Shown here one piece after another: positions 29,560 to 64,000 of a stretch of DNA of 64,000 nucleotides. The position numbers and the translations under genes were made by a program. Every line of letters begins with the position of its first letter. The stretch's first letter is position 1. The stretch spans positions 434,001 to 498,000 of the IMG/VR virus record IMGVR_UViG_3300027749_002876; one strand, 5' to 3'. The notes beneath the pieces are model-generated. The model made no database searches, was not told where the DNA came from, and was given only the letters and a program-made list of their open reading frames with translations.

Positions 29560-29850
29560 TTATCGTTTGTCGCAATACTCAAAAAGTATCCATTTTGCAC
29601 GATTGAGGGCTTGACGGGCATCTTCGGCTCGCATATAGTCAATTTCACCATATTCGGTGTTAATCATCTCTTGGGCATCACTCATCAAACTAGCGGCCAT
29701 CATTGCAGGACCCGAATGACGAAAAGTAATACTTTGTTCTACAGCCTCACGCATTTGGGCTTCTGTGCAACCATACATGCGGATCTCACGTTTTTCTTGC
29801 ATATCACGGTTAACAGCATTGACGATAGAAGAACGAAAATCAACTGTCAT
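29560..29850 (-). CDS. hypothetical early protein
   Basis: 96 aa; AAGGAG RBS; own promoter copy. Confidence 0.75.
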   Translation of the reverse strand: MTVDFRSSIVNAVNRDMQEKREIRMYGCTEAQMREAVEQSITFRHSGPAMMAASLMSDAQEMINTEYGEIDYMRAEDARQALNRAKWILFEYCDKR

Positions 29851-29867
29851 AAAAACTCCTTTAATTA

Positions 29868-29911
29868 ACTTACTAAGACTCTATTATATACCCAAAACTA
29901 TTTATTGTCAA
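29868..29911 (-). promoter_or_regulatory. early promoter-leader repeat copy
   Basis: TTGACA 29911-29906, 17 nt, TATAAT 29888-29883. Confidence 0.85.
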
Positions 29912-29925
29912 ATTTTGGTAACCGT

Positions 29926-29947
29926 AAAAAAGCCCCGTTTCCAGGGC
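29926..29947 (-). terminator. intrinsic terminator after clpP
   Basis: Minus strand GCCCU-GGAAAC-GGGGC then UUUUUU. Confidence 0.7.
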
Positions 29948-29962
29948 AAAACGTAATATTTT

Positions 29963-30550
29963 TTATTCTCGTTTTTCGATAATTTTATCAATCAATCCAT
30001 AGTCTAATGCTTGTTTGGCTGACATAAAGTTATCACGTTCCATATCAAGTGTAAGTTGTTCAAACGTTTTACCTGCACTGTTATGTTTGACATATATTTC
30101 AGTAAGGTTCTTTTTCATTGCTAGAATTTCTTCTACTTGAATCAACATATCAGTTGCCTGACCACGTGCGCCACCACTAGGTTGATGAATCATATGTCGT
30201 GCATTTGGCAACATAAAACGTTTGTCTTTGGCACCTGCTGTTGCCAATAGACTGCCCATACTACAAGCCTGACCCATAACGATTGTTTGCACATCAGGTT
30301 TGATGAATTGCATACAATCATAGATGGCCATACCAGCAGTTACGCTACCACCTGGACTATTGATATACATTGAGATATCTTTCTCACCCTCTGATTCTAA
30401 AAATAATAGCTGGGCAACGATTAGATTTGCCATTTGGTCGTGTACTTCACCTTCAAGCAAAATAACACGGTCACGCAATAGACGGCTGTAGATATCGTAA
30501 CTACGCTCGCCTTTAGCGGTTTGTTCAATAACGATTGGGACTAGACTCAT
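29963..30550 (-). CDS. clpP: ATP-dependent Clp protease proteolytic subunit
   Basis: [24 protein letters not shown] (Ser), MIHQP (His), ERDNF (Asp). Confidence 0.97.
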
Positions 30551-39346: not shown

Positions 39347-40315
39347 TTATGGACAACTACTGTCATCTACTACTGACAACTCAATATTGTGAATATATTT
39401 TATTGCCTCTTCCATATTGGTTAGTCTTAATTCTATTAAGTTTTTTTCTGTTTGATTTCCGTATACTACTAGTGTAGAACCCAAATCATAAAAAGCTGGC
39501 TTCTTACCTACAACAGAATCTGGCACATAACATTGCTTAAACGTTATAGTATTCTTAAAATCTTTAATAGTTAACAAAATGTTAGGTTTATTTCTTTGCA
39601 TTTTATCTCTAATAGTCGATGTAATAATCATATCGTTAAACTTATATTGATTTTTACTACCAATAACCCAATCTTTAGGATCCTTTGCCATTACAGTAAC
39701 ATTGCTCGGGCTGGGTGTTAACAATCCATTACTGCCATCCTCTAATATCTTCAATGCTTCATTAAATGAAACAATGTAGTTATAGTTCCATTTCAATTCT
39801 AATGGAATTTCAATGATACCATTGCGATAGCTATCCACTTTAAATTGATGAACCCCTTGAGTAACAGTAAATGCTTTTTTGGGATAGTCATTTAATACTT
39901 GGTTTAACAATCTATCTGCGTTAGCTTTTACTTGTAGAAATGTTTTATATTGGTTAGAGTGTTTATCAGTATCAAAGTTTTTAACTTCTTTACCCACTCC
40001 TAATATTCTATCGGATAACTTACTACTGGCTACTTGAACATCAACAATAACTTGAATATGATTTCCCAATTTAAATGTGTTAATGATTTTGTAATCAGTT
40101 ACATAACCGGCACTATAAACTAAAATTTCATCTTTAACTAGTTTATAGTTGACAGATTCACGTTCTGTGGTTACGACTGAGCCAGCAACAATCTCAATCG
40201 CTGTTCTAAAAGCATTTAGTTTAGCTTCCTCGAACGTAGATCCTTGACCACTAACCTGCAATGCGTTAGCAAAAGGTGCTACCAGACATAATAACACTAA
40301 TAATAGTCTTTTCAT
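39347..40315 (-). CDS. secreted protein (LPP20/FlgT-N-like N-terminal domain)
   Basis: Signal peptide; G-G----EA--NA-R-AIE---GS-V. Confidence 0.65.
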   Translation of the reverse strand: MKRLLLVLLCLVAPFANALQVSGQGSTFEEAKLNAFRTAIEIVAGSVVTTERESVNYKLVKDEILVYSAGYVTDYKIINTFKLGNHIQVIVDVQVASSKLSDRILGVGKEVKNFDTDKHSNQYKTFLQVKANADRLLNQVLNDYPKKAFTVTQGVHQFKVDSYRNGIIEIPLELKWNYNYIVSFNEALKILEDGSNGLLTPSPSNVTVMAKDPKDWVIGSKNQYKFNDMIITSTIRDKMQRNKPNILLTIKDFKNTITFKQCYVPDSVVGKKPAFYDLGSTLVVYGNQTEKNLIELRLTNMEEAIKYIHNIELSVVDDSSCP

Positions 40316-40983
40316 TATTGACCAAAGCGTTTACGCATATACATTGCGGCACGTTCAGTATCATGGTCCCAACGAATAACTGCCTTAACAGTTTGTCTAT
40401 CTACGATTTCAGCATCTTTAAGTAATGCACCACGTAGTTTACCTTCAGCATTGTTACGAATGCTTTCACTCAGTGTACGAACAACCTCGTTATTGTTTTC
40501 ACGTACAGCAAAGTTTGTGTCTTTGCTTGCATCTTGGTCACTCATTTCAACTGCTTCATCGGCACTGATACGATTTTTAATACGATCCTGAGCCTTCTCT
40601 ACATTCTTTGTAACAGTATTAGAAAAGTTGTTTGAACTAACACCCTCATTCATAAAACGAATTAGTCTTGCCTTCGCATCCATCTCTGCGGCAATAAATG
40701 CACGTTCACGTAATGCTTCACTATTGCCAAAACTATTTGCATAGCCGGTAACTTCAATAGATTGGATTTCACCCTTGACACACAATGCATCAGTAACACC
40801 AAACATACCTGTGCCAAATGCACAAGACCATTCAATCTTGATACCCTGTCGTTTAAAACTAGAGGTAAGTTTTTGTGTATTAATTGCAGTAATGGGCGCA
40901 GATTCTACACTTGCTTTTTTACTGGTTGACGAACATCCAGCTAGCACCAATGCTACTGAAATTGCTACTAGTTTGAGTTTCAT
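40315..40983 (-). CDS. lipoprotein (LPP20-like)
   Basis: Lipobox LAGC in MKLKLVAISVALVLAGCSS; likely start 40983; upstream TTGACG-17-TATAAT at 41042-41014. Confidence 0.75.
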   Translation of the reverse strand: MKLKLVAISVALVLAGCSSTSKKASVESAPITAINTQKLTSSFKRQGIKIEWSCAFGTGMFGVTDALCVKGEIQSIEVTGYANSFGNSEALRERAFIAAEMDAKARLIRFMNEGVSSNNFSNTVTKNVEKAQDRIKNRISADEAVEMSDQDASKDTNFAVRENNNEVVRTLSESIRNNAEGKLRGALLKDAEIVDRQTVKAVIRWDHDTERAAMYMRKRFGQ

Positions 40984-41038
40984 ATATACTCCGATTTTGT
41001 TAAAGATGTGTTTATTATACACTACTTTTAACTAAACG

Positions 41039-42574
41039 TCAACTATTTTGGTTACCCTTTTGAATTTTAATGTAATCTTCAATTTGGTAACGCTCATTGT
41101 CTGACAACAATTCTGGGTCATACTCGCCCTTTGCAATCATATCAATAAGGTAATCAATGTATTTGGTATTGTACAAGTATGTATTGCTAGAAGTTTTGGC
41201 AATTTCAATCCAATTTTGTCCATCAAATTTGTAAACTTTATTGGGTAATACATCTACACGGGTGAACACATCACCTTTATCCGAGGAATCAGGAAACTTT
41301 GGTCCAAACCCACTGGTAATCTGTTTACCCGAATCTACTGAGATTTTTAAGAATTCCGGATGCATACTGAATAATGCTTCTTTTTGCATATGTTTACCTT
41401 CGTATGCAACATATCCGCCTGGTAATTCTTTAAACGGTAAATCCTGTTTTACCAACATAGTGTGATCCTCATCTGCTGTGAGTTCAACATCAGGTTCTTT
41501 TGTAGCAACCATTGGCTTAGTATCAAAATGAACGAATGGTTTATTCAAATATGGATGTTGTTTTAGTATTGATTCTTCTTCAAAAGGACCATCACTAACG
41601 TCACATAATTTATTTGGGCAAAATAGACCGATGCCAGTAGCATTTATCAATTCAGTACCACACATATAACAGTTGATTGGTTCATTAACCGATTCTTTAA
41701 TCTGTACAATTTGGCCATCTGTTAATGGCCCATCATCAGGTTCATATGCTGGTTCTGTGACAGTGGGAGTTGATACTGGTTCAGTCCCTAGAGGGCTGTC
41801 ACCCTCCTCATCCCATTCTTTACTTGCATTGGCAGCTAATACTAAAGCAATAGCTAAAGGATCAAATACAATAACAAGTAAAATAATAACCCAACGCACT
41901 GATGCCTCTAACATATTGGTATCAGCGTTGTCACCATATATCAACGCGGCAATGTATTTTATCGGACCGACTTCTGCCTCAACCTTGCGTACCTCGGAAG
42001 CAATAGGGGCTCGTTCTTCATTAAGTATTGTAATTTTTTTCTGTTCGGCTTCAATCTCAGCAAGGAGACGCCCACGTTCCTTTTGTTGACCCCTACGTAC
42101 AGCCACGGCCTTATCTGCACCCGTTTCTGTTGTACTTCGACCCATAATTTGGTCCACTGCCTCATCCATTTGTTTGAGAGCTTTGCGATTAACATCTATA
42201 TTTTCCTTTGATATTTTAATCTTCTCATCGTATAATGCAATCTTAGATTGTACATCACCTGAGGTAACACCTTGTTCCATGTGTGCTTTGCTTAAGAAGC
42301 CAAAGATACCCATGCTTGTTAATAGTGCAAGTGCAATAACAGCAGGTACAAGATATAGTTTAAGTAAGAAGCCGGCACGATTCCAATACTTACGTAGCCA
42401 AACAGTTGTGGTAATCTTACCTATTTCAAGGATACCGCCCATGATGATAACAGGAACAACCGCACCTGCAAAGATGGCGGTTAATCCAATGATACTATAC
42501 CAGGCTGCGACTGAGCTAAGTGCAAGAGCAACCAATAGTGTAAGATTTGAGAATGATAGAAATTTTAAGCGCAT
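41039..42574 (-). CDS. membrane protein with TM helices, coiled coil and C-terminal soluble domain
   Basis: Three N-terminal TMs, coiled coil, IILLVIVFDPLAIAL TM; TAAATA 4 nt before ATG. Confidence 0.75.
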   Translation of the reverse strand: MRLKFLSFSNLTLLVALALSSVAAWYSIIGLTAIFAGAVVPVIIMGGILEIGKITTTVWLRKYWNRAGFLLKLYLVPAVIALALLTSMGIFGFLSKAHMEQGVTSGDVQSKIALYDEKIKISKENIDVNRKALKQMDEAVDQIMGRSTTETGADKAVAVRRGQQKERGRLLAEIEAEQKKITILNEERAPIASEVRKVEAEVGPIKYIAALIYGDNADTNMLEASVRWVIILLVIVFDPLAIALVLAANASKEWDEEGDSPLGTEPVSTPTVTEPAYEPDDGPLTDGQIVQIKESVNEPINCYMCGTELINATGIGLFCPNKLCDVSDGPFEEESILKQHPYLNKPFVHFDTKPMVATKEPDVELTADEDHTMLVKQDLPFKELPGGYVAYEGKHMQKEALFSMHPEFLKISVDSGKQITSGFGPKFPDSSDKGDVFTRVDVLPNKVYKFDGQNWIEIAKTSSNTYLYNTKYIDYLIDMIAKGEYDPELLSDNERYQIEDYIKIQKGNQNS

Positions 42575-53975: not shown

Positions 53976-54170
53976 CTAGTTTTCCCAAGTTTCAAATCCA
54001 AAATGTTTTTTAATCAAATCATTAGCCTTGTACGGTTCTGCATTATCAGCAATATCAGCACATTCCTTGACAATTAACTCGGCTAACTTTCCTACATTGT
54101 CAACATTCATCCATTTGCCACTAACGTCGGTTCCCACTTGTGTAATCAATTCTTTAATTCGTTCACTCAT
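53976..54170 (-). CDS. FAELIV-family small protein
   Basis: ERIKEL...KLAELIVKECADIA...IKKHFG. Confidence 0.7.
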   Translation of the reverse strand: MSERIKELITQVGTDVSGKWMNVDNVGKLAELIVKECADIADNAEPYKANDLIKKHFGFETWEN

Positions 54171-55168
54171 ACTAAACTTCCCTTATATGGACTGTTCAAC
54201 CATTTCGAATATATTTCCGCTTGTGCGCTAATTTTTTGTAAATCATACTTGCCACAGAATTTTAGAAAGTGTAGACCCACTTGAGGAATAGTCTCAACTC
54301 GGACACTTTCACGAATACGTTGATCCACAGCATCTTTAATTTCTTGGGGCTGTGCAGTCAAGTCAATGAGGGTTTTGTTGCGCTCAAATGCATCTTTAAC
54401 TCGCACCTCAACATTATTGTGATCGACAAAACGTTGCAACATAAAATTATTATAATTAAAGCCCATTTTATTTCGATCCTCAAATGCTTCACGAATACCA
54501 ACTTTATTCTTAGTGCCTTTTTCTCTGGCCCCGGGGTACGCCGCAAATACGTTGTCGCTTGAATCACCTCTGACCAATTTTTTAAATAATCCGTACTCGG
54601 GATCTTCTAAGAGTTTTGGTTCTTTAGTTTTCTTATCAATGACTGGTTTACCATTTTCTTTGAGATATCCATTAGTAGTTACAAGTTCATTGCCTACGCC
54701 ATTATATCTAGAAACTTTGTCTGTAATGAGTTGGTCGTAATCCGTGTCTGTGGAAATTATGTAGTGCCGATCTGATGGATGCAATGCGATGAAGCGGGCA
54801 ATCATGTCATCTGCCTCAGCACGTTCGTGTCGCAGGACACTTACGTTGGTCTTGGATTGAATGTATTCTGTAAATTTTGAATACGTGTCCCAAAACATTT
54901 TTGATTCTTCAGCCTCTTCCTCAGTAATAGACATAGCATCTACTACACGATTTTTTTTATATGGAGCATATAAATCTTTGCGAAAGCTACGGCCTTCGAG
55001 ACAGAAAACGCAGTGGTCAATTCCAAAACGTTTTACTGCTTGATTCACACTTGCTAGTGTAAGGTGCAAGGCCATGCCTATCTTCTCTTCCAAGGTACTA
55101 GAACGTGATGCCACGTGTCTAGCACGGAAGAAAGTATTTGCAGTATCGATGAGAGCGTATTTTGTCAT
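54167..55168 (-). CDS. rnh: T4 RNase H-like 5'-3' exonuclease (FEN family)
   Basis: LIDTAN-FFR, EADDMIA, ISTDTDYDQL, GDSSDNV; TTGACA-17-TATAAT (55203-55175) ends 6 nt before ATG. Confidence 0.9.
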   Translation of the reverse strand: MTKYALIDTANTFFRARHVASRSSTLEEKIGMALHLTLASVNQAVKRFGIDHCVFCLEGRSFRKDLYAPYKKNRVVDAMSITEEEAEESKMFWDTYSKFTEYIQSKTNVSVLRHERAEADDMIARFIALHPSDRHYIISTDTDYDQLITDKVSRYNGVGNELVTTNGYLKENGKPVIDKKTKEPKLLEDPEYGLFKKLVRGDSSDNVFAAYPGAREKGTKNKVGIREAFEDRNKMGFNYNNFMLQRFVDHNNVEVRVKDAFERNKTLIDLTAQPQEIKDAVDQRIRESVRVETIPQVGLHFLKFCGKYDLQKISAQAEIYSKWLNSPYKGSLV

Positions 55169-55206
55169 GTGTCTATTATATACTACTATTTAGATGTTGT
55201 CAAGAT

Positions 55207-55638
55207 TTAAAACCCTTCAAGATACTTTTCTGGGTGCTTTAATGCGGTCTTCATAAAATCTTTAAGATTTGGTGTCTCTCTGGTTAATGGTAAATGTTTC
55301 TTTTTAACAATGAAGATACCAGGAATACGTGCGATTTTAGAACGATAATATTCTTCTAAAATATCCACTGTAATTCCAGTGTCCTTTATGCTAATGTATT
55401 CTGTGCGGTTGTAACCATTGAATTTAGAAAAGTGTTTTTTGAAGTAAGCTTTTCCATCTTCTTCTAGAGTACGAATCTTACCCTCAAGCCCGGGCCGTGC
55501 GATACATGCAAAGTGAATGATAACTTGATTACCTCCTTTTGAATATCCACCGATACGAGAACCAAAATCCTCTGTAATCCCGGGCTTTGAGTACAATTCT
55601 TTACCCTGCACTTCAGCAATGTAAAGTCCCTGTGTCAT
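55207..55638 (-). CDS. GIY-YIG-like nuclease-fold protein
   Basis: GLYIAE-----YSKPGIT-DF-SRI--Y; LEE later; TAATG-coupled to upstream gene. Confidence 0.55.
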   Translation of the reverse strand: MTQGLYIAEVQGKELYSKPGITEDFGSRIGGYSKGGNQVIIHFACIARPGLEGKIRTLEEDGKAYFKKHFSKFNGYNRTEYISIKDTGITVDILEEYYRSKIARIPGIFIVKKKHLPLTRETPNLKDFMKTALKHPEKYLEGF

Positions 55639-56939
55639 TATCCCACCAAATCTTGTGTTTCTTGGGGTAATGCATCAAACAATGTATAATCATTATCATC
55701 GTAGTCTTCCAAGAATGTCCTAGATATATTCTTAAATGTACCACCGTGTTTGTAATATATTTGCAATAACAGTGCTAAAGATGCATCAGCAGGTGTACTT
55801 GGTATCTTCTCATCTGGATTAGATTCCTTGTGCCAAGTTCTGAACGTGCCTTCAGCAAGTCGACGGAACTCTGCCGGAGAACCTGAAATGTTACGAATGA
55901 TATTACCTAATGACATTACAAATTCTTTAATATCTTTTGATTTCAAAGACTTGTTACCTTTGATTTTATTACGCAAGTTAATCATAGGAATAACTTCAAT
56001 AGAGTCAACACTCCGATAGTCCCAATTCCACTGATGAATTTGACACCACCAGTGTACTTCTTCGTCTGTCAAGTCTTTTAACAAGTCAACACGAACAAAC
56101 GCACCCGGCAAATCTTTATTGTCATCATCTTCTTCATGTACCGGGACAATGCCATATGATTCCATGATAATCTGTTTAGCAAATGCTTCTTCGTATAATT
56201 CCTTAGTAACAGTATTTGGATTGTCTTGTCGCTTACACAAAACATAGTTCTTCCATTTATCAAAGTAAACCAGTCTACGCTTGTCCTCGCCGTTAATACC
56301 CAAGAAGTGTTCACGTGCAAAAGTAAAATTGTGAAACTCAATCACTTGACATTTGATTTCAACATCAAGCCAATTGTCAGCAGAAATACCATCATCAGCA
56401 AAGTGACCCCATTTAGACAATACACCATATGATACTGCGGTATGTTGACCGTCAATGATGTAGTAATGATATTTGTTTTTAACTTTGATTTTAAGAATGT
56501 TAACGTATTGCACTTTCTTGGGATCAAAGTTCTCTACGATTTTCTTAATGTGACCATGAATTAATGGACGTTGAACAGCAAGTGCGCTCAACAACTCACG
56601 CAATGGTATTGCTTCATAGTACGGTAAATTCTTGTAAGAAACTACCTTCTTACTTGTATTACGTTTTGCAATACCTGAAAGTTTATCATTCATAAATCCT
56701 TCAACCAATGCTTCAACAGTTTTAGCATCATGTTCATTGGGCTTCTTATCTAAAACGTTTACAGCACGTTCAGATGGGCTAATTGTATGGATATCTGCAT
56801 CATCAAATGCAAACAAATCAATCGGTGTAGTGAGAATAGCCTTCATAAGTGCCTTTTTTACTTTCTTTGCGCTAGGTTTTCTTACTGGATCTTCTTTCGA
56901 AAGTTTTGCAGATTGTGTTTTTTTAGCTATAGTTACCAT
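55638..56939 (-). CDS. ParB/Srx-like domain protein (DGQH motif)
   Basis: VQRPL---HIKKI--NFD...YIIDGQHT. Confidence 0.7.
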   Translation of the reverse strand: MVTIAKKTQSAKLSKEDPVRKPSAKKVKKALMKAILTTPIDLFAFDDADIHTISPSERAVNVLDKKPNEHDAKTVEALVEGFMNDKLSGIAKRNTSKKVVSYKNLPYYEAIPLRELLSALAVQRPLIHGHIKKIVENFDPKKVQYVNILKIKVKNKYHYYIIDGQHTAVSYGVLSKWGHFADDGISADNWLDVEIKCQVIEFHNFTFAREHFLGINGEDKRRLVYFDKWKNYVLCKRQDNPNTVTKELYEEAFAKQIIMESYGIVPVHEEDDDNKDLPGAFVRVDLLKDLTDEEVHWWCQIHQWNWDYRSVDSIEVIPMINLRNKIKGNKSLKSKDIKEFVMSLGNIIRNISGSPAEFRRLAEGTFRTWHKESNPDEKIPSTPADASLALLLQIYYKHGGTFKNISRTFLEDYDDNDYTLFDALPQETQDLVG

Positions 56940-56958
56940 GAAAAATTCCTATGAGTCA

Positions 56959-57002
56959 AGTTGATAAGTCTCTATTATAGACCCAAACGGATTAATTGTC
57001 AA
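56959..57002 (-). promoter_or_regulatory. early promoter with variant leader
   Basis: TTGACA 57002-56997, 17 nt, TATAAT 56979-56974, leader AGAGACTTATCAACT. Confidence 0.8.
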
Positions 57003-58060
57003 GTTTTATCTAATTTGTATCCGGTTACAATAAGCCCATATTGTGAAAATTCACGGTAAAATGCATCGATATCATTACCATAATATAGGAAACATTGTCC
57101 TCGGGTATTTACACTACTTTTTTTACCATCTACTGCAATAAAACTAATTCTATGGTCAGTGAAGCAAAGAGCATTAGCTGTATCTGCTAGTTTTTTAAAC
57201 CAACCTGTGTCGGTTGAATTGTTACACAAAATGATAGCTTGTTCAAAATTAGATTTTTCTAGCTCGGTCAAAAACTTATTTACTGCTACTTTCATAAGAG
57301 GACCATATGGTGGATTTAACCATACTGATTTGGCATTCCAATCCTTTGAACACCCATCATCTTTTTCTGTGAATATTCTTGAGGCTTTTACAGTTTCGTT
57401 TGCTTTGACACTACTAAACGGGTCCAAATCAATAGTTCCACCAAATACGTTACGTGCAGAATTTGTGTATTTTTCAGGTGTGTACCAGCTATCGCTGTCT
57501 CTATCTTTAGTATATGCTACGGGTGAAGAACCTACATATGCAATATTAACTTTTTTAGTGACCTTTTTCATTTGATTATTTATCACTTGGTCAATTTTAG
57601 TACAAGTACCTTCATAATCAAGCGCAACAAATTTGTTGTTTTTTATGCGAGAGGCTTCTAAATTTATTGCTTCTATAATAAGTTTCCCTCGCTTTTCTTT
57701 CCAATGCTTACCCATAGTTGCACACAAGTATTCTTGAAATATGCTTTTATTAGCATGAAATAATACACCAAGCATTTTTTCATCAACACTACCCGGTACC
57801 TCTTGTGTTTTCACTTCAATCCCTAATAAGGGAACAGTACCTTTAAACAAACCAAAATCGATTCTTCCAGGAGCACCAAACCAATTAGTATATGGATATT
57901 GTTTAACTGCAACGATTTTATCTTTTGGAATTATAGAATTTTGAAATGCACTATATGATTCATAAATTGTAATTCCGCTTTTTATTAAATGAGCGGCAAC
58001 TAATGAATCCCCTGCTTTACCTGAATCCTGTGCCAATGTGCCCTGACTGTGTTTAATCAT
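56999..58060 (-). CDS. PD-(D/E)xK nuclease-like domain fused to phage Dam-type N6-adenine methyltransferase
   Basis: N-half RIDF-(12)-IEVKTQ---GSVDEK; C-half DSWYTP, IDLDPFSS, VWLNPPYG, TDTGWF. Confidence 0.8.
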   Translation of the reverse strand: MIKHSQGTLAQDSGKAGDSLVAAHLIKSGITIYESYSAFQNSIIPKDKIVAVKQYPYTNWFGAPGRIDFGLFKGTVPLLGIEVKTQEVPGSVDEKMLGVLFHANKSIFQEYLCATMGKHWKEKRGKLIIEAINLEASRIKNNKFVALDYEGTCTKIDQVINNQMKKVTKKVNIAYVGSSPVAYTKDRDSDSWYTPEKYTNSARNVFGGTIDLDPFSSVKANETVKASRIFTEKDDGCSKDWNAKSVWLNPPYGPLMKVAVNKFLTELEKSNFEQAIILCNNSTDTGWFKKLADTANALCFTDHRISFIAVDGKKSSVNTRGQCFLYYGNDIDAFYREFSQYGLIVTGYKLDKT

Positions 58061-58090
58061 TACTTGTGTCCTATAATATTTTTGAATAAA

Positions 58091-58510
58091 TTAACTAACC
58101 TCAGTACGGCCTTCGCCTAAGTTTTTAGTGCGTACCATTCGTAAGTCACGGTTCGTTGGATCGGCCTGTTGTTGTTCATAGACCTCGAGTGCAATATTTC
58201 TACAAATTGTTTGAAACCAACGATCTACTAACACGTTATCTGTATCAGTATCTTTTTGTTTATAACCTGCACGAATTAAATTTACAATAAACTTCTCATT
58301 CCAGTCAAGTTCAAATGCACCATTGTTAACATCATTGGGGTCAAGCTCCAAACTTAGAATGTTAATATACGGCTCACCTGCTGCCGTTGCTTTTTCTTTA
58401 GCAGTAAGTTCAGGTACTACTGGTGCAATTTTCTTTTCCTTAACTTTTTTAGGTTCGGGTTCAGATTTAACTTCTGGCTTTTTAAATAAATTCTTTATTT
58501 TTTCAAACAT
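58091..58510 (-). CDS. conserved hypothetical protein
   Basis: KEKATAAGEPY, GAFELDWNE-F, VDRWFQ-ICRN. Confidence 0.75.
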   Translation of the reverse strand: MFEKIKNLFKKPEVKSEPEPKKVKEKKIAPVVPELTAKEKATAAGEPYINILSLELDPNDVNNGAFELDWNEKFIVNLIRAGYKQKDTDTDNVLVDRWFQTICRNIALEVYEQQQADPTNRDLRMVRTKNLGEGRTEVS

Positions 58511-59600: not shown

Positions 59601-60476
59601 ATGAGAATTAACGAATTTATAACAGAGTCTAGTAAGATTTGCCCACAATGTGGAATGAGAGGTTGCACGTGCAAACCTGGAAAATGTAATTGCAAACCAA
59701 AGCCTGGTTATCCAAAACAGGTTGATGAAGCCGCTAATCCAGCACAACAAGCCGCTATAGCTATTGCTATGAAAAAAGCTGGTAAAAAGCCAAAAAATAT
59801 GCATGAAGAAGATGAGGGTATGTTTGGTAGATCCAAAAACGATAAACGATATTTAGATAAATTTGATCCAACTGAAGTTATGAATATCAGTGATGATCCT
59901 AGTAAGGCACATAAAACAACGGGCAAGGGTTCATTAAGAACATCTAAGAAAGATTTAGAATTTGCATTTGGACCACCCGGAGAAGATGATACATGGGTTT
60001 TAGAATTTAAGAATGGTTTAATTGCCACTATATACCCACAATCTAACAGTGGTGGCATGGATTGGATCATAGGTGGTAATCATACAAACACTGAAGATTT
60101 TGTACATATGGCTTATTCAGCCGCACTTGATGAAAAACTTGAAGAGGATTGGAACAAGGTCAACCAGAAAGACAAAACATCTGGTATGAGCCGTAAGGCA
60201 GTAAAAGCATATCGTAGAGAAAATCCAGGTAGCAAATTACAAACAGCAGTTACTACTAAACCTAGTAAATTAAAGCCTGGATCAAAAGCTGCCAAACGCC
60301 GTAAGAGTTTTTGTGCTAGAATGAGTGGTAACAAAGGTCCTATGAAAAAGCCTAATGGTAAACCTACTCCCAAAGCATTAGCACTACGTAGATGGAATTG
60401 TGAGAGTGTAGAGCAAATGGAAGAATTGGTAATGTTAGCAGAACAATTTATCCGCAATCACAAGACTAAACTTTAA
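59601..60476 (+). CDS. modular basic protein, probable virion-internal (Cys-rich N-term; RKSFCARM...LRRWNC module)
   Basis: N-term MRINEFITE; CPQCGMRGCTCKPGKCNC; C-terminal module common in T4-like phages. Confidence 0.7.
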   Translation: MRINEFITESSKICPQCGMRGCTCKPGKCNCKPKPGYPKQVDEAANPAQQAAIAIAMKKAGKKPKNMHEEDEGMFGRSKNDKRYLDKFDPTEVMNISDDPSKAHKTTGKGSLRTSKKDLEFAFGPPGEDDTWVLEFKNGLIATIYPQSNSGGMDWIIGGNHTNTEDFVHMAYSAALDEKLEEDWNKVNQKDKTSGMSRKAVKAYRRENPGSKLQTAVTTKPSKLKPGSKAAKRRKSFCARMSGNKGPMKKPNGKPTPKALALRRWNCESVEQMEELVMLAEQFIRNHKTKL

Positions 60477-61293
60477 GTAGTTCTTCTAAAGTATATAAGT
60501 TCTTCATATAGGGTGATACATTTTCTAGTACACTACTAGCAATGTCGCCCTTCCTTCTTGGGCCGTATTTCACGTTGAAGCTAACATCATTGACTTTTTG
60601 AAACTCATCAACAATCTCACTAACAGTATATCCTACTCCGTGACCTAAACATTCTACACTATTGCTAGGTTTCTCAATAGCTTGTTTTAATGAATCACAT
60701 ATCTCATTTACGTGTACATAGTCACGTACACAAGTACCATCAGGTGATACATCATAATCATTACCAAAAATTGTAAACTCTTTTGATTGCATGGCCATTA
60801 TTAAATTATACATTAATCCATCGGGGTTAGTGGGAGCAAAGCCTTCGCTTCCAATAACATTATAAAATCTAAAGATTGTATATGGGGTTGCTCGATGGGT
60901 TGTACAATATTCTCTTACCACATCTTCTGCCGCACGTTTGCTGATACCATAAGCACTACAACAATCTTGTGCGGCACCGGTGCTTGCAAAGATAAAGTTC
61001 TTTGTCTTAATCTTATTCAATACATTCATTGTACCATTCAAGTTAGTTATATAATATTGAATAGGTTTCTGCTCACTTTCACCCACATTAACTAACGCGG
61101 CCAAATGAATAACACAATCAAACTCATCTTCTAAACTAAAAGGTCGATTGATATCACAATGATAGAATGTATGCGGCGACTCTTGTGGTTCTACTTTATC
61201 TAAACCATACACTTGATATTCACCCTTCAATATCTTAGTAAGATGTGAACCAATGTAACCGCTATTACCTGTTATTAAAACTTTTTTTACCAC
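60466..61293 (-). CDS. galE: UDP-glucose 4-epimerase-like NAD-dependent epimerase
   Basis: ITGNSGYIG, HLAA---VGES, YGISK (YxxxK), RFYNV, DGTCVRDYVHV; GTG start. Confidence 0.9.
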   Translation of the reverse strand: MVKKVLITGNSGYIGSHLTKILKGEYQVYGLDKVEPQESPHTFYHCDINRPFSLEDEFDCVIHLAALVNVGESEQKPIQYYITNLNGTMNVLNKIKTKNFIFASTGAAQDCCSAYGISKRAAEDVVREYCTTHRATPYTIFRFYNVIGSEGFAPTNPDGLMYNLIMAMQSKEFTIFGNDYDVSPDGTCVRDYVHVNEICDSLKQAIEKPSNSVECLGHGVGYTVSEIVDEFQKVNDVSFNVKYGPRRKGDIASSVLENVSPYMKNLYTLEELLKV

Positions 61294-62618
61294 TGAAATA
61301 ATTCCTCACTAGTTTCTAATGCTGGTTCAAAGATCGGATCTTTGGTTAAATATGTGTCATTGTCTGTATAGATAACTCTAAATTTATGTTTGTTAGTCAA
61401 CACACTGCGAACATCATCAATACAAATTACATTACGTCCTAAATTCTTAATGAAGTCAGTATGTGTAATAGTTGTTTCATTGCAAATTTTGGCTGTATTA
61501 GTGTTAGATTTTTTACTATCAAACTCATTAAAACAATTATTCCACTTATGAAACACAGTAGCTTCTTGTTCTTGTGCATGTTGTAATGATCCTAAGTTAT
61601 ACCATCTTTCTGCTTTTTCAAAAATATCATATAACTCTTTTGCTTTACTTGCCATGTCTTTCTTTGTGCATTTGTAAAAGAAATTATCATTGAAGTTTTT
61701 AGTCCAGCGTTGATTTTCTAATACCAGTGTGGGCAATTGAATATGTTGTTCATAGAAAGCCATACCATAACTCTCAACAACACTAGGATTAAACGCAATA
61801 CGACTAGACTTAATAAAATCTACTTTCTCTTGTCCAACAATACTAGCACGAACATCATACATGACTCCTAGTTTAGACAATCTATCTTCAAACTTCTTTA
61901 CACCATTAGGACTAGTCATAACCTTAACCGGTAGTTTAGTCTGCTCAATCAATTCAATAAACAACTCAGGATTCTTACCTTCTTCCCATCGACCAACAAA
62001 CAGTATCCCCTCACGTTCACCTGTGTACACAGTTAATAAGTCTGGTTCAGTAATAGGTATAGGAAGATGATAGGATGATTCATTTAAATGTAGTTGATTG
62101 AATTTACTTTGAGTTCCTATATCAATGTTTGTTGTGCTTAATTGTTGGCGCATCATCACATTGGTGTTGTGTAAGAATGGATTCTTAGTGTCTTTGAATA
62201 TCTGGCTTTCTAAGTGAGTGTAGGCAATGATTTGAATACAATCCTCAAGACCCATAGTACTAGCTACTTGCACAGTTTCATATGTATTACATACAAACGC
62301 ATCGTATAAGTTATTCTCTAACGCTTTGATAATACTATTACGGAAATTAGCCATGCGTTCATAACAGAATGTATCACCATACATAAAGATGTTGCTATGC
62401 TCAGTATAACGTAATGAATCAGCAGGCGATATGATATTAGCCGGAATAGATTTGATAAACTCATTATCTTGCGGTTCTTTGTCAGTAATGATATCAACTT
62501 TAACATTATGACTATCCATTAACTCACAAAAACTTTTTGTAAATTGTCCTATGCCACCATGTGGTATTAATGTTTGATAGCTTACTAAAAAGCCAATTCG
62601 TTTATCGTATGTTCTCAT
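61287..62618 (-). CDS. GT4-like (GT-B) glycosyltransferase
   Basis: HGGIGQF, LFVGRWEEGKNPE, FNPSVVESYGMAFYE. Confidence 0.85.
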   Translation of the reverse strand: MRTYDKRIGFLVSYQTLIPHGGIGQFTKSFCELMDSHNVKVDIITDKEPQDNEFIKSIPANIISPADSLRYTEHSNIFMYGDTFCYERMANFRNSIIKALENNLYDAFVCNTYETVQVASTMGLEDCIQIIAYTHLESQIFKDTKNPFLHNTNVMMRQQLSTTNIDIGTQSKFNQLHLNESSYHLPIPITEPDLLTVYTGEREGILFVGRWEEGKNPELFIELIEQTKLPVKVMTSPNGVKKFEDRLSKLGVMYDVRASIVGQEKVDFIKSSRIAFNPSVVESYGMAFYEQHIQLPTLVLENQRWTKNFNDNFFYKCTKKDMASKAKELYDIFEKAERWYNLGSLQHAQEQEATVFHKWNNCFNEFDSKKSNTNTAKICNETTITHTDFIKNLGRNVICIDDVRSVLTNKHKFRVIYTDNDTYLTKDPIFEPALETSEELFQW

Positions 62619-62788
62619 TTATCTTCTATAGTAGGTACATCTTGCCATTCAGTATATTCACGCTTTTTAGTAAAACTACCTTGAATAGTAGTTGTACTAT
62701 AATCAGTTACTTCAATTTGTGTTCTATATTGTAACACTTTTTCAGGTCCGTCCCAACCGCTTCGGACAAGATATCTTAATTCATACAT
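62615..62788 (-). CDS. hypothetical protein, 57 aa, not in the ORF track
   Basis: MYELRYLV...KVLQYR...EWQDVP; ATGA-coupled to the GT. Confidence 0.6.
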   Translation of the reverse strand: MYELRYLVRSGWDGPEKVLQYRTQIEVTDYSTTTIQGSFTKKREYTEWQDVPTIEDK

Positions 62789-62792
62789 ATAT

Positions 62793-63029
62793 TTACCTTT
62801 TTAACAACCACATAATATGGGCATTTTTATCGTGCCAACTGTGTTCTAAACTAATTTCACTTGGTCCAGCATAGATACTGGTTAGTCTATAAGCCCACTT
62901 TAACCAAATACATTTACCTGACAAATCACAAGTTTCAGGCAACCATGCAAACTTTAAATCTGCACCCAAGTATTTGTTACGATAGGAGTCATTGATACCC
63001 ATACTATCTAGTGGCATAACTATCTCCAT
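62793..63029 (-). CDS. hypothetical protein
   Basis: FAWLP--C-LSGK-IWLK-AY. Confidence 0.6.
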   Translation of the reverse strand: MEIVMPLDSMGINDSYRNKYLGADLKFAWLPETCDLSGKCIWLKWAYRLTSIYAGPSEISLEHSWHDKNAHIMWLLKR

Positions 63030-63271
63030 CGTAACATAAAATGAATATAATCTTTCTCATCTGTGAATTTGAACGTAGTTTCAAATCCATCATCTTGTGT
63101 ATCTTTATATTCATACGTCCACCTAGATTTTGTTCTACCAGGACCAAAAGTATCAACACACCAATCTAATGGATTATTTTTATCTCTTATAGAACCGTCT
63201 GGTCCCATATAGTGTTTCCAATAATCCCAAGATAATAAAGCAATGTGTTGATATTTTTTCATGTGCCCCAC
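63020..63271 (-). CDS. small hypothetical protein (DWC...F-FTDE-DY--F-LRW family)
   Basis: 83 aa; pattern shared with 22662-22862. Confidence 0.6.
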   Translation of the reverse strand: MGHMKKYQHIALLSWDYWKHYMGPDGSIRDKNNPLDWCVDTFGPGRTKSRWTYEYKDTQDDGFETTFKFTDEKDYIHFMLRWR

Positions 63272-64000
63272 TCGTTTTTGAAAAGAGGTACTTGAAGTCT
63301 ATCACTGTACCGATAACCACGATTCATTGCTTCAATAGCAACATTCTTAGCATTTAAGTTATACAATGATTCTACACCACCGCAAGGCATGAAGTATACA
63401 GGGCCTCTGAATCCACCATTACGAAATTCTAGTACAGCTTTGTCTGCTTCAATTGCATCTTCACTAGTAGCAATAACAAACTTAAGATACACAAAGCCAA
63501 TACTTTCATATTGACGAATGATGTTAGGACAAATTGCTTCACTCCACTTCTCGCCACTGATACTTAGTTTAGGACTAACACTAAATGTTAATGCATTCTT
63601 TTCTCTGTTAATCTTCCATTGTTGTAGATAGATTGATAGGTCTTGACTTAGTTCTTGTGTACCATTAGTTTCAAAAGTAATCTCTTTGAGACCTCTCATT
63701 TTTTCGTTTGAAAGTAATTCTGGATATGCTCTTTGCCATCCAAGAAGAGGTTCACCACCAGTGATAACAAGGTGCTCATCCATCCAGCGACCGTGAGGAA
63801 GGATAGTAAGAATAGAGTCAACAATAGAAACGGTACTGAGCATAGGACTAAGATGCTTAAATCTAGAGTCCCACGAGGCGTAGGAATCGCAACCTGTACT
63901 GACAAGCGGTAAGGATTTATAATCTGTATAATCTTGTGCTTTAATCGCAATAACATCTCTTTCACTACTCAATTCTCCTTTATTCATGCCGAAGCCACCA
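63259..64000 (-). CDS. queE: 7-carboxy-7-deazaguanine synthase (radical SAM), 5'-truncated by window edge
   Basis: GCDSYASW, HLVITGGEPLL, TFETNGT, SVSPKL, YLKFV, SDRLQV; frame stays open to the window end (GGFG before the track's Met). Confidence 0.88.
   Translation of the reverse strand, partial: GGFGMNKGELSSERDVIAIKAQDYTDYKSLPLVSTGCDSYASWDSRFKHLSPMLSTVSIVDSILTILPHGRWMDEHLVITGGEPLLGWQRAYPELLSNEKMRGLKEITFETNGTQELSQDLSIYLQQWKINREKNALTFSVSPKLSISGEKWSEAICPNIIRQYESIGFVYLKFVIATSEDAIEADKAVLEFRNGGFRGPVYFMPCGGVESLYNLNAKNVAIEAMNRGYRYSDRLQVPLFKNEWGT

What the first reader, a model, noticed from the sequence alone, without database searches (positions are those of the whole stretch)
55207..58060. Nuclease-Dam fusion, ParB-like DGQH protein and GIY-YIG-like gene form a three-gene island
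Seen: a PD-(D/E)xK-like domain (D-x12-EVK, GSVDEK) is fused to a phage Dam-type MTase (NPPY). It is followed by an early-promoter-driven ParB/Srx-like protein coupled to a GIY-YIG-like ORF, just upstream of rnh. Known: this MTase family is usually a stand-alone orphan; ParB/Srx and DGQHR (DndB-like) domains recur in defence and conflict loci. Inference: a phage-borne single-chain restriction-modification enzyme plus a nucleotide-sensing nuclease module, acting against host DNA or co-infecting phages.
Basis: partly seen in the sequence, partly recalled or inferred. Interest (0 to 1): 0.66.

Follow-up and report, generated by a model that had tools for sequence, protein, structure and literature searches.

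The report
Two separate nuclease modules, one slot

Summary
All three ORFs exist at the stated coordinates on the minus strand. Gene A (353 aa) is a restriction-endonuclease-fold domain (Pfam PDDEXK_11; model pLDDT 91.8; BstEII Z 10.5; invariant D68, E82-x-K84, D93-E94-K95) fused to a PF05869 Dam methylase with NPPY. In other phage contigs the same two domains are separate, overlapping genes, so A is a fused nuclease-methylase pair. Gene B (433 aa) has a ParB/sulfiredoxin fold (PadC Z 9.3) and is nearest to DUF6551. Gene C (143 aa) resembles T5orf172/GIY-YIG domains. B and C are translationally coupled (TAATG), sit behind a perfect sigma-70 promoter, and are predicted to bind (ipSAE 0.75, best control 0.01).

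The "three-gene island" is not supported. Of 80 IMG/VR loci with B, only two copies of this same phage carry A, and relatives with A at this site lack B-C. The site between a conserved 139-aa gene and rnh is a variable slot that elsewhere holds HNH, NUMOD3 or another methylase cassette. B-C alleles (32-90% identity) vary independently of their flanks (about 65%).

Best reading: a compact restriction-modification-like cassette beside an NTP-binding ParB-fold/GIY-YIG nuclease complex. No activity has been tested.

The parts
56999..58060 (-). Gene A, 353 aa: nuclease-Dam fusion
   Evidence: ORF. Pfam PDDEXK_11 plus Dam. It is the only PF20472 and the only PF05869 match in the record. Seven full-length fusion homologues at 49-98% identity.
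57551..58060 (-). A residues 1-170: PD-(D/E)xK restriction-endonuclease-fold domain (D68, E82-x-K84, D93-E94-K95)
   Evidence: Model m2e3a4dc710a3 has pLDDT 91.8 and pTM 0.84. VIA matches: BstEII Z 10.5 (138 aligned, rmsd 3.5), Can2 9.1, and BsoBI, PspGI, SgrAI, EcoRII-C, MunI, Bse634I and Cfr10I at 7.0-7.8. Foldseek match to BstEII at 1.3e-3. E82 is invariant, and Q86, G90, S91, E94 and K95 are at least 90% conserved, across 28 distant homologues.
57002..57511 (-). A residues 184-353: PF05869 Dam-type N6-adenine methylase domain (DLDPFSS, NPPY 249-252)
   Evidence: Pfam 2.8e-19. phrog_111 DNA methyltransferase 9.9e-35. PADLOC orphan MTase 7e-11. It is 60% identical to the stand-alone Dam of L016.
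56974..57002 (-). Perfect sigma-70-type promoter (TTGACA-17-TATAAT) in front of B. The TGA stop of A lies inside the -35 hexamer.
   Evidence: It fits the record's extended early-promoter consensus. Equivalent promoters stand in front of B in L008 and L006.
55638..56939 (-). Gene B, 433 aa: DUF6551-like ParB/Srx-fold protein with a long helical C-terminal domain
   Evidence: Model mbd75b347022f has pLDDT 84.5. More than 140 homologues. phrog_1033 ParB-like in 33 of 38 members. Weak DUF6551 in 30 of 38 members. Atlas DUF6551 clusters at TM 0.46/0.66 over 260 residues.
56292..56642 (-). B residues about 100-216: ParB/sulfiredoxin nucleotide-binding fold (QRP 123-125, DGQHT 163-167, FAREHFLGINGxDK 207-220)
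   Evidence: VIA matches: PadC Z 9.3 (94 aligned, rmsd 2.8), sulfiredoxin 8.7, KorB 7.7, pNOB8 ParB-N 7.5, serine kinase 7.4. Foldseek match to sulfiredoxin at 1.3e-3. Invariant columns.
55636..55640 (-). TAATG: the stop of B overlaps the start of C (translational coupling)
   Evidence: The same overlap or abutment occurs in relatives.
55207..55638 (-). Gene C, 143 aa: T5orf172/MUG113-type GIY-YIG-superfamily domain, predicted partner of B
   Evidence: Atlas feature search scores 0.94 with 181 shared features to T5orf172/GIY-YIG clusters. A 31%-identical homologue gives the same families. Invariant Y6, K18, G20, R28, E59, E80 and Y81. Predicted complex with B: ipSAE 0.75 against a best control of 0.01.
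55175..55203 (-). Perfect sigma-70-type promoter in front of rnh: the downstream border of the variable slot
   Evidence: Loose ends of contigs from related phages cluster at 55110-55195.
54167..55168 (-). rnh / 5'-3' exonuclease (flap endonuclease): conserved backbone gene downstream of the slot
   Evidence: PF02739 9e-17. 62-83% identity in 70 or more related loci.
58091..58510 (-). 139-aa conserved gene (p139): backbone gene upstream of the slot
   Evidence: phrog_13349 6e-10. 55-88% identity in related loci. Loose ends cluster at 58285-58325.

Best explanation
The region is a swap-prone slot between two backbone genes (the 139-aa gene and rnh) of a clade of freshwater T4-like jumbo phages. 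In this phage the slot holds two independent modules.

Module 1, gene A. A is a fusion of what are, elsewhere, two overlapping genes: a small PD-(D/E)xK nuclease and a PF05869 Dam methylase. I infer that it works as a compact restriction-modification-like enzyme. The Dam half would methylate adenines in the phage's own DNA, and the nuclease half would cut DNA that lacks the mark (host or rival phage DNA). Its patchy distribution suggests a selfish, mobile cassette.

Module 2, genes B-C. These are transcribed early from a consensus sigma-70 promoter and are translationally coupled. B is a DUF6551-like protein with a ParB/sulfiredoxin nucleotide-binding fold and a helical C-terminal domain that is predicted to hold C. 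C is a T5orf172-type GIY-YIG domain that keeps the Tyr/Arg/Glu catalytic pattern. I infer an NTP-regulated, two-subunit DNA nuclease. It would follow the logic of GmrSD/SspE-type enzymes (ParB-like NTPase plus nuclease), or of ParB-activated phage DNA enzymes. Its specificity would diversify by exchange of whole B-C alleles.

Shown: the folds, motifs, coupling, promoter, synteny, allele swapping and the predicted B-C interface.
Inferred: every enzymatic activity and the biological target.
For: Gene A:
- Pfam PDDEXK_11 plus Dam.
- Nuclease-domain model at pLDDT 91.8, matching BstEII at Z 10.5 and many type II enzymes.
- Invariant D68, E82, K84 and D93-E94-K95.
- Stand-alone homologues P0289 (45% identity) and P0292 (34%) are each followed by an overlapping stand-alone Dam gene. 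The L016 Dam is 60% identical to the C-terminal half of A and aligns from A residue 164. The junction there is GTGA.
- Another relative (L087) carries a D12 Dam (4.8e-21) beside a 285-aa unknown gene in the same slot.

Genes B-C:
- ParB/Srx fold and DUF6551-like whole-length shape.
- T5orf172/GIY-YIG features in two divergent members.
- TAATG overlap and a perfect promoter.
- C follows B in 72 of 80 loci by tblastn. Of the six loci with downstream DNA but no tblastn hit, the two inspected (L073, L087) hold a divergent, overlapping C.
- B and C identities move together (34/33%, 50/46%, 68/74%) while flanks stay at about 65% (r = -0.23).
- Predicted complex: ipSAE 0.75 against a best control of 0.01. 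That mark was reached by 58 of 80 solved complexes and 2 of 110 mismatched pairs. The runs agree in at least 82% of contacts, and partner pLDDT is at least 82.

Independence of the two modules.

The arrangement is real DNA: error-free contigs from other samples bridge A-B and p139-A.

Literature: phage DUF6551 proteins bind CTP or ATP (PMC12704722), and a phage ParB homologue activates a DNA dioxygenase on dsDNA (PMC13229309).
Against: - No activity has been measured.
- A has no separate target-recognition domain, and a roughly 130-residue nuclease core may be too small to be sequence-specific.
- The Pfam PDDEXK_11 score is only just above its cut-off.
- P0299, another stand-alone homologue, has no recognisable methylase next to it.
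- In this phage A lacks a promoter of its own.
- B has Thr where ParB, Srx and DndB have the phosphate-binding Arg (DGQHT), so NTP binding is not assured.
- C fails every Pfam model and its fold was not modelled on its own. T5orf172 was first described as a DNA-binding domain, so C may not cut.
- The complex score used my own alignments, so the calibration holds only roughly.
Confidence: 0.5

Rival explanations
1. One reading: the three genes are one co-functioning island, a single-chain restriction-modification enzyme whose action is coupled to a nucleotide-sensing ParB/GIY-YIG nuclease.
For: The genes are adjacent and on the same strand in this phage. The stop of A sits inside the -35 box of the B promoter. 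ParB domains are often fused to PF05869 Dam in other proteins (PF02195 plus PF05869 rows; PMC12704722; PMC4738411), so a ParB-Dam functional link exists in general.
Against: Of 80 B loci, only the two 100%-identical copies of this phage carry A. L012/L013, L014 and L015 carry A without B-C. P0004-type A sits in a tail-gene block. A second, related copy of the locus in the same record has neither.
Confidence: 0.07
2. A is a protective (anti-restriction) orphan methylase. Its PD-(D/E)xK domain would be a DNA-binding, nicking or repair-type accessory (like MutH or Vsr) rather than a restriction nuclease.
For: The PF05869 family is mostly made of stand-alone orphan methylases (PADLOC 'oMTase'). 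The record under-represents GATC (O/E 0.58) and avoids AGATCT, TGATCA and GGATCC, which suggests host restriction pressure that a Dam would relieve. PD-(D/E)xK folds also serve in repair and as Cas-associated effectors (Can2, Bax1 and SfsA).
Against: The full catalytic set is invariant over 28 homologues down to about 22% identity. The gene order and overlap of the split form (nuclease first, methylase second) is that of type II systems. The best structural matches are type II restriction enzymes.
Confidence: 0.25
3. B-C is not a nuclease. It would be a DNA-binding switch: a ParB-like clamp with a small DNA-binding partner, as in KorB-KorA or ParB-parS, that silences or organises DNA early in infection. 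Allele classes would then act as specificity or incompatibility types.
For: B aligns to KorB over 178 residues (Z 7.7). From my own knowledge, T5orf172 was first described as a DNA-binding domain of viral regulators. The gene pair has early expression, and its allelic classes are independent of the flanks.
Against: I found no multi-copy parS-like palindrome of 14 bases or longer in the record. The GIY-YIG-type Tyr, Arg and Glu of C are invariant down to 31% identity. No ParA-like gene is adjacent.
Confidence: 0.2
4. B-C, and perhaps A too, is a selfish homing cassette. A GIY-YIG endonuclease with a ParB-like DNA-binding helper would cut the empty or different allele in co-infecting relatives and be copied in.
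For: The slot holds homing-type genes in relatives: HNH_3 in L115 and a NUMOD3 gene in L015. B-C alleles are exchanged regardless of their flanks. In the same lake samples, contigs of relatives break off exactly at the slot borders.
Against: B-C is present in nearly all relatives rather than patchy, is kept intact with conserved motifs, and has a strong early promoter. Free-standing homing genes are usually sporadic.
Confidence: 0.15

Closest known systems
Type II / type IIC restriction-modification enzymes (nuclease and methylase in one chain, PD-(D/E)xK at the N-terminus)
   Same: A has an N-terminal PD-(D/E)xK domain with a D...ExK...E-type catalytic set and a C-terminal N6-adenine methylase with NPPY. 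The split form has the nuclease gene overlapping the methylase gene. The best fold matches are BstEII, PspGI, EcoRII-C, SgrAI and Cfr10I.
   Different: A is only 353 aa and has no separate target-recognition domain. Its methylase is the small phage Dam family PF05869, which is normally an orphan. Neither cleavage nor a shared target has been shown.
Phage orphan Dam methylases of Pfam PF05869 / TIGR01712 (T1, HP1 and 933W type, named from my own knowledge) and ParB-Dam fusions
   Same: The C-terminal half of A is a clear PF05869 member (69.8 bits). Many relatives are stand-alone proteins of 190-210 aa, or are fused to ParB_N.
   Different: A scores below the TIGR01712 equivalog cut-off (50.1 against 97.05). 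It carries a nuclease domain rather than ParB. Only 7 such fusions turned up among 5.8 billion clustered proteins.
DUF6551 / ParB-CTPase-fold proteins of phages (PMC12704722)
   Same: B has the ParB/Srx fold and its whole-length shape is like DUF6551 clusters. Phage DUF6551 proteins were shown to bind CTP or ATP.
   Different: B is below the Pfam threshold (13.3 against 26.8 bits), has DGQHT in place of an Arg-bearing P motif, and is tied to a T5orf172 partner that the survey does not describe.
GmrSD / BrxU / SspE-type enzymes (ParB-like DUF262 NTPase plus nuclease); GmrS/GmrD as two chains (named from my own knowledge)
   Same: The logic is the same: a ParB-fold nucleotide-binding part joined to a nuclease part. 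Structural matches to BrxU (Z 4.5) and SspE (Z 4.3) are weak.
   Different: The nuclease part here is a separate GIY-YIG/T5orf172 protein, not an HNH/DUF1524 domain. The module is phage-borne and early-expressed, and nothing shows dependence on DNA modification.
ParB-activated phage thymine dioxygenases (PMC13229309)
   Same: In both, a phage ParB homologue without an obvious DNA-binding domain is a specific partner of a DNA-acting enzyme encoded beside it.
   Different: The partner enzyme here is GIY-YIG-like, not a dioxygenase. Activation has not been tested.
T5orf172 / MUG113 domains (Pfam PF10544, PF13455; GIY-YIG clan)
   Same: C shares the pattern Y...K-x-G-I-T...R...E...E-Y and scores 0.94 to these clusters.
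   Different: No Pfam model reaches significance. C has a roughly 50-residue C-terminal extension that is predicted to touch B.

Membership tests
PD-(D/E)xK nuclease superfamily, Pfam PDDEXK_11 (PF20472): A residues 1-170 | Profile match above the curated cut-off | tested here: met
   23.9 bits against 23.7. 26.1 bits on the six-frame search. Precomputed PF20472 hits in 5 of 7 fusion homologues and in the stand-alone homologues looked up (P0289, P0292, P0299). The match is marginal for the window protein itself.
PD-(D/E)xK nuclease superfamily, Pfam PDDEXK_11 (PF20472): A residues 1-170 | Alpha-beta-beta-beta-alpha-beta core fold | tested here: met
   The model (pLDDT 91.8) has H6-27, E49-58, E64-73, E76-85, H92-105 and E110-116. 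BstEII Z 10.5, and many restriction enzymes at Z 7-8.
PD-(D/E)xK nuclease superfamily, Pfam PDDEXK_11 (PF20472): A residues 1-170 | Catalytic D ... (D/E)-x-K | tested here: met
   D68, E82 and K84 are invariant in 8 fusions. E82 is invariant across 28 distant homologues. Position 68 is mostly D or E, and position 84 mostly K or R, by inspection of the alignment.
PD-(D/E)xK nuclease superfamily, Pfam PDDEXK_11 (PF20472): A residues 1-170 | Metal-dependent DNA cleavage | not testable with these tools
   Needs an enzyme assay.
Phage Dam methylase, Pfam PF05869: A residues 184-353 | Profile match above the cut-off and the (D/N)PPY motif | tested here: met
   69.8 bits against 28.1. NPPY at 249-252 and DLDPFSS at 211-217 are invariant.
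Phage Dam methylase, NCBIfam TIGR01712 equivalog | Score above the equivalog cut-off | tested here: not met
   50.1 bits against 97.05. A is a family member by domain, not an equivalog.
Type II / IIC restriction-modification system | Nuclease and methylase encoded together | tested here: met
   Fused in A. Adjacent, overlapping genes in L016/L017 and L020.
Type II / IIC restriction-modification system | Both activities act on one target, and methylation blocks cleavage | not testable with these tools
   No methylome or cleavage data. Only contigs, not raw long reads, were on hand.
ParB/Srx (ParB-CTPase) fold: B residues about 100-216 | Fold | tested here: met
   PadC Z 9.3, sulfiredoxin 8.7, KorB 7.7 and pNOB8 ParB-N 7.5. 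Foldseek match to sulfiredoxin at 1.3e-3.
ParB/Srx (ParB-CTPase) fold: B residues about 100-216 | Pfam ParB_N or DUF6551 above the cut-off | tested here: not met
   DUF6551 at 13.3 bits against 26.8. It is weak in 30 of 38 members, with a best E-value of 3.1e-4. PF02195 was not hit.
ParB/Srx (ParB-CTPase) fold: B residues about 100-216 | Arg-bearing phosphate motif (GERR, GCHR or DGQHR) and NTP binding | tested here: inconclusive
   The motif is DGQHT with an invariant Thr167. His166, Arg124 and Arg209 are invariant. Binding was not testable.
DndB / DpdB (DGQHR) proteins | DndB profile, and a dnd or dpd gene context | tested here: not met
   PF14072 hit in 1 of 38 members at E 0.13. No TGT/DpdA in the record. 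No dnd genes nearby.
GIY-YIG superfamily, T5orf172 / MUG113: C | Profile match | tested here: not met
   No Pfam hit for the window protein. PF10544 in 2 of 28 members at E 0.059. No hit in the six-frame search.
GIY-YIG superfamily, T5orf172 / MUG113: C | Conserved Tyr, Arg and Glu of the active site, and family likeness by language-model features | tested here: inconclusive
   Y6, R28 and E80 are invariant. Score 0.94 with 180-181 shared features for two members that are 31% identical. The match of residues to catalytic roles rests on my reading of the motif. The fold was not modelled alone.
GmrSD / SspE-type ParB-NTPase-nuclease enzymes | DUF262 N-domain with a DUF1524/HNH nuclease | tested here: not met
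   Only weak structural matches (BrxU Z 4.5, SspE Z 4.3). The partner is GIY-YIG-like. This is a likeness of logic only.

The most novel reading that the evidence does not exclude
B-C is an undescribed class of phage two-subunit DNA enzyme. A DUF6551-like ParB-fold nucleotide switch would load or gate a T5orf172 GIY-YIG nuclease. It would be kept at one fixed early-gene locus in a whole clade of freshwater jumbo phages, but exchanged among at least three allele classes, as expected for a determinant of phage-against-phage or phage-against-host specificity. Beside it, the PDDEXK_11-Dam pair or fusion would be a new minimal restriction-modification type carried by phages.
Probability: 0.3. Interest if true: 0.75.

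Novelty: new variant of a known kind. Interest (0 to 1): 0.52.

Why it matters
Three points would matter if the inferences hold.

- **A possible minimal restriction-modification enzyme.** If A cuts unmethylated DNA, the small phage Dam family, usually filed as orphan methylases, would include members that are half of a minimal restriction-modification system of about 350 aa. This would be useful for understanding phage-phage exclusion, and as a compact enzyme.
- **An assayable partner for a ParB-fold protein.** B-C gives a ParB-fold protein of unknown role a concrete, testable partner. ParB-CTPase-fold proteins outside chromosome segregation are an open field (PMC12704722, PMC13229309), and a ParB-gated GIY-YIG nuclease would add a new output to that switch.
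- **A natural experiment in cassette exchange.** The slot has promoter-bounded cassettes and allele swapping that does not follow the flanks. That makes it a natural case of modular exchange in jumbo phages.

Tried and rejected
- **Cultured-phage homologues.** The INPHARED phage collection has no near-identical DNA and no protein match for B or C at 1e-5 or 1e-2. At E of 1 or less, B gave only 60-residue ParB-motif matches.
- **PDB sequence profiles.** Nothing for B and only noise for C.
- **PADLOC.** No defence-system model matched B or C.
- **B as a DpdB/DndB-type helper of 7-deazaguanine or phosphorothioate modification.** Rejected: there is no TGT/DpdA, QueC is only a sub-threshold hit, and there is no DndB profile match. 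PTPS is present twice.
- **parS-like sites.** No palindrome of 14 bases or longer occurs three or more times in the record.
- **Full-length model of A.** A mixed alignment misplaced the tails of the stand-alone homologues, so only the N-terminal domain was folded.
- **Literature.** No paper mentions PF20472. DUF6551 appears only in the ParB survey and one unrelated tool paper.
- **Reads.** Only Logan contigs were available, so there is no information on transcript starts, expression or methylation.


Full report
**Setting.** The window is bases 434001-498000 of a 524,565-base IMG/VR virus record. The record comes from freshwater metagenomes. Its neighbours include T4-like genes: UvdE, a 5'-3' exonuclease (rnh) and, in relatives, gp13, gp15 and sheath genes. 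All genes discussed here lie on the minus strand:
- p139: 58091-58510
- A: 56999-58060, 353 aa
- B: 55638-56939, 433 aa
- C: 55207-55638, 143 aa
- rnh: 54167-55168

**Gene A: what is shown.**
- Pfam gives Dam PF05869 (2.8e-19, residues 184-324) and PDDEXK_11 PF20472 (23.9 bits against a cut-off of 23.7, residues 11-128). PHROGs and PADLOC call the C-terminal half a DNA methylase or orphan methylase.
- A word-indexed search of 5.8 billion proteins found only seven full-length fusions (49-98% identity). Everything else was Dam alone or Dam fused to other domains, often ParB_N.
- In the eight fusions, D68, E82, K84, the run QEVPGSVDEK (86-95), DLDPFSS and NPPY are invariant.
- Because the nuclease call rested on a borderline profile score and on who its relatives are, I spent the one exhaustive search on residues 1-175. 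It found 25 proteins among 1.84 billion representatives. Nearly all are stand-alone proteins of 150-200 aa with the same motifs.
- Folded with that alignment, the domain gives a confident model (pLDDT 91.8, pTM 0.84).
- Its best matches are restriction enzymes: BstEII (Z 10.5, 138 aligned, rmsd 3.5), then Can2, BsoBI, PspGI, SgrAI, EcoRII-C, MunI, Bse634I and Cfr10I at Z 7-9. Foldseek agrees weakly (BstEII 1.3e-3).
- D93-E94-K95 opens the helix after the ExK strand. That is where Cfr10I-type enzymes place an extra catalytic Glu. This last point is my own knowledge, not a tool result.

**Gene A: the fusion event.**
- Two stand-alone homologues, P0289 (45% identity) and P0292 (34%), are each followed by an overlapping stand-alone PF05869 gene.
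- The L016 Dam is 60% identical to the C-terminal half of A. It aligns from A residue 164, so the linker of A is the old N-terminus of the methylase. The junction in L016 is GTGA, start over stop.
- A third homologue, P0299, has no recognisable methylase beside it.
- A is therefore a fused form of a nuclease-then-methylase gene pair, the arrangement of a type II restriction-modification operon. That it restricts is an inference.

**Gene B.**
- More than 140 homologues exist, none with a Pfam domain on record.
- The model (pLDDT 84.5) has a ParB/sulfiredoxin fold at residues about 100-216: PadC Z 9.3, sulfiredoxin 8.7, KorB 7.7, pNOB8 ParB-N 7.5 and serine kinase 7.4. Foldseek matches sulfiredoxin at 1.3e-3.
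- The helical C-terminal half has no clear solved relative.
- Weak but consistent profile hits support the call: DUF6551 in 30 of 38 members and phrog_1033 'ParB-like partition protein' in 33 of 38.
- Predicted-structure libraries give DUF6551 clusters over 260 residues (TM 0.46/0.66) and uncharacterised proteins of uncultured and cyanobacterial myoviruses.
- Invariant residues include Q123-R124, D163-G-Q-H-T167 and F207-A-R-E...N216-G-x-D-K220. The Arg of the GERR or DGQHR motif is a Thr here.

**Gene C.**
- No profile library recognises it.
- Its invariant pattern (Y6, K18-x-G20, R28, E59, E80-Y81) reads like T5orf172.
- The language-model search puts it next to T5orf172/MUG113/GIY-YIG clusters (0.94, 181 shared features). 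A homologue only 31% identical gives the same families (0.94, 180).
- I treat this as a supported lead, not as proof of the fold.

**B and C as a pair.**
- The TAA stop of B overlaps the ATG of C.
- A perfect TTGACA-17-TATAAT lies at 57002-56974, with the TGA stop of A inside the -35 box. The record has 54 such perfect sites with long shared flanks. My arithmetic from base composition expects about one. Relatives keep a promoter in front of B.
- In 80 IMG/VR loci with B, tblastn finds C directly after B in 72. Two loci are cut at the contig end. Six have downstream DNA but no hit, and the two of those I inspected hold a divergent, overlapping C.
- The complex prediction gave ipSAE 0.75 against a best control of 0.01. 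That mark was reached by 58 of 80 solved complexes and 2 of 110 mismatched pairs. The runs agree in at least 82% of contacts, and partner pLDDT is at least 82.
- The predicted interface joins B 32-49, 272-277, 351-361 and 425-431 to C 48-68, 104-106 and 133-143. This supports binding but does not show it, and my own alignments were used.

**There is no three-gene island.**
- The backbone p443 - epimerase - UvdE - p139 - [slot] - rnh is conserved across the clade.
- The slot holds different things in different phages:
  - B-C alone in most relatives, with extras in some: a 1.1-kb GC-rich insert in L006, a 193-aa gene in L010, and a 285-aa gene plus a D12 Dam (4.8e-21) in L087.
  - A alone in L012/L013 (85% identity) and L014 (73%), and A plus a NUMOD3 gene in L015 (50%).
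  - A with B-C only in this phage and its two 100%-identical copies, L021 and L022.
- P0004-type A (51% identity) sits among tail genes instead.
- A second, 75-90% similar copy of the whole region in the same record has a 194-aa gene, an HNH_3 gene and a 264-aa gene in the slot.
- B identity ranges from 32 to 90% and tracks C (34/33%, 50/46%, 68/74%), but not the flanks (about 65% throughout, r = -0.23). For example, L095 has p139 at 88% and p155 at 94%, but B at 34%. B-C is therefore exchanged as a unit among allele classes.
- In L012 and in the window, stop codons sit inside the next -35 box. This suggests that the repeated promoters are the cassette borders. That is an inference, and it recalls the promoter-stem-loop shuffling described for T4-type phages, which I cite from my own knowledge.
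- Contigs from four other lake samples bridge A-B and p139-A without a single difference, so the arrangement is real DNA. Contigs of co-occurring relatives break away at 55110-55195 and 58285-58325, which are the slot borders.

**Mechanism.**
- For A, I commit to a compact restriction-modification-like enzyme: self-protection by m6A and attack on unmarked DNA.
- For B-C, I commit to an NTP-binding ParB-fold subunit that holds and gates a GIY-YIG-type nuclease subunit made early in infection.
- Precedents: phage DUF6551 proteins bind CTP or ATP (PMC12704722). A phage ParB homologue activates its neighbouring DNA dioxygenase on dsDNA (PMC13229309). GmrSD/SspE-type enzymes join a ParB-like NTPase to a nuclease (my own knowledge; weak structural echoes).
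- The rivals are listed in their own section: A as a protective methylase with an accessory domain, B-C as a non-catalytic DNA switch, and B-C as a homing cassette.

**Novelty.**
- I found no paper on PF20472, and only the ParB survey on DUF6551.
- Both modules are built from known folds in arrangements I could not find described, so I rate them a new variant of a known kind.
- The island itself is not a real unit.

Noticed in passing
whole record G000 (the window is 434001-498000 of it): The 524,565-base record looks composite. Bases from about 18 to 170 kb are collinear, in inverted order, with about 511 to 360 kb at 75-90% nucleotide identity. Bases 172924-177012 repeat directly at 520477-524565 (99.6%). 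A genome of about 347.5 kb with a 4.1-kb terminal repeat, joined to 173 kb of a second related phage, would fit the 300-360 kb contigs of relatives.
   Followed up: partly
record-wide; in the window at 1424, 1616, 2322, 14969, 28419, 29230, 29555, 29911, 30607, 46109, 48995, 49259, 49584, 55203 and 57002: There are 54 perfect TTGACA-N16-18-TATAAT sites. Most share a consensus of about 60 nt (TTGACAATAAATGG..TTTGGGT.TATAATAGAATCTTAGACAGT.AAGAAAAGGA) in front of small genes. They may be early promoters that also serve as recombination borders of cassettes.
   Followed up: partly
whole record: Some palindromes are strongly avoided (observed / expected): TGCGCA 1/37.7, AGATCT 1/26.1, AGCGCT 1/21.1, TGATCA 19/88.7, GGATCC 37/136.9, ACGCGT 0/3.3 and TCGCGA 0/3.3. 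GATC has O/E 0.58 and CGCG 0.41. This is probably a footprint of host restriction systems.
   Followed up: no
L087:3594-5945: In a relative, the same slot holds, after B-C, a 93-aa gene, a 285-aa gene with a D...ELK motif, and a D12-class Dam (PF02086, 4.8e-21). This is a second, unrelated candidate restriction-modification pair at the same site.
   Followed up: partly
L115:2889-4941 (record bases 39388-41440): The second copy of the locus in the same record fills the slot with a 194-aa unknown gene, a Cys-rich 197-aa HNH_3 endonuclease (24.9 bits against 24.8) and a 264-aa unknown gene, behind its own perfect promoter.
   Followed up: partly
L015:1284-1874 and L015:3481-4077; L014: The UV-repair gene upstream is not fixed. 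UvdE is replaced by a faint Pyr_excise (endonuclease V-like) gene in L015 and is missing in L014. The gene after A in L015 carries a NUMOD3 motif, typical of homing endonucleases.
   Followed up: no
L006:4820-5940: A relative has a 1.1-kb, visibly GC-richer insert with several small ORFs and its own consensus promoter, exactly between p139 and the B promoter.
   Followed up: no
window 60466-63987; record 29629-30018 and 499614-500003: Upstream backbone genes suggest sugar or base chemistry: an NAD-dependent epimerase, a 443-aa protein with a weak glycosyltransferase-1 match, a weak radical-SAM match, and PTPS (QueD-like) in both halves of the record. There is no TGT/DpdA.
   Followed up: partly
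window 58061-58090: A has no early promoter of its own here. Its 85%-identical homologue in L012 has TTGACA-17-TAGAAT between p139 and A, with the stop of p139 inside the -35 box. The window looks as if that stretch was deleted.
   Followed up: partly
window 59601-60476 (+): This is the only plus-strand gene in the block. It is 291 aa with a Cys-rich N-terminus and a DUF6321 domain (1.4e-15). Relatives have a longer DUF6321 protein next to a GP88-like gene.
   Followed up: no
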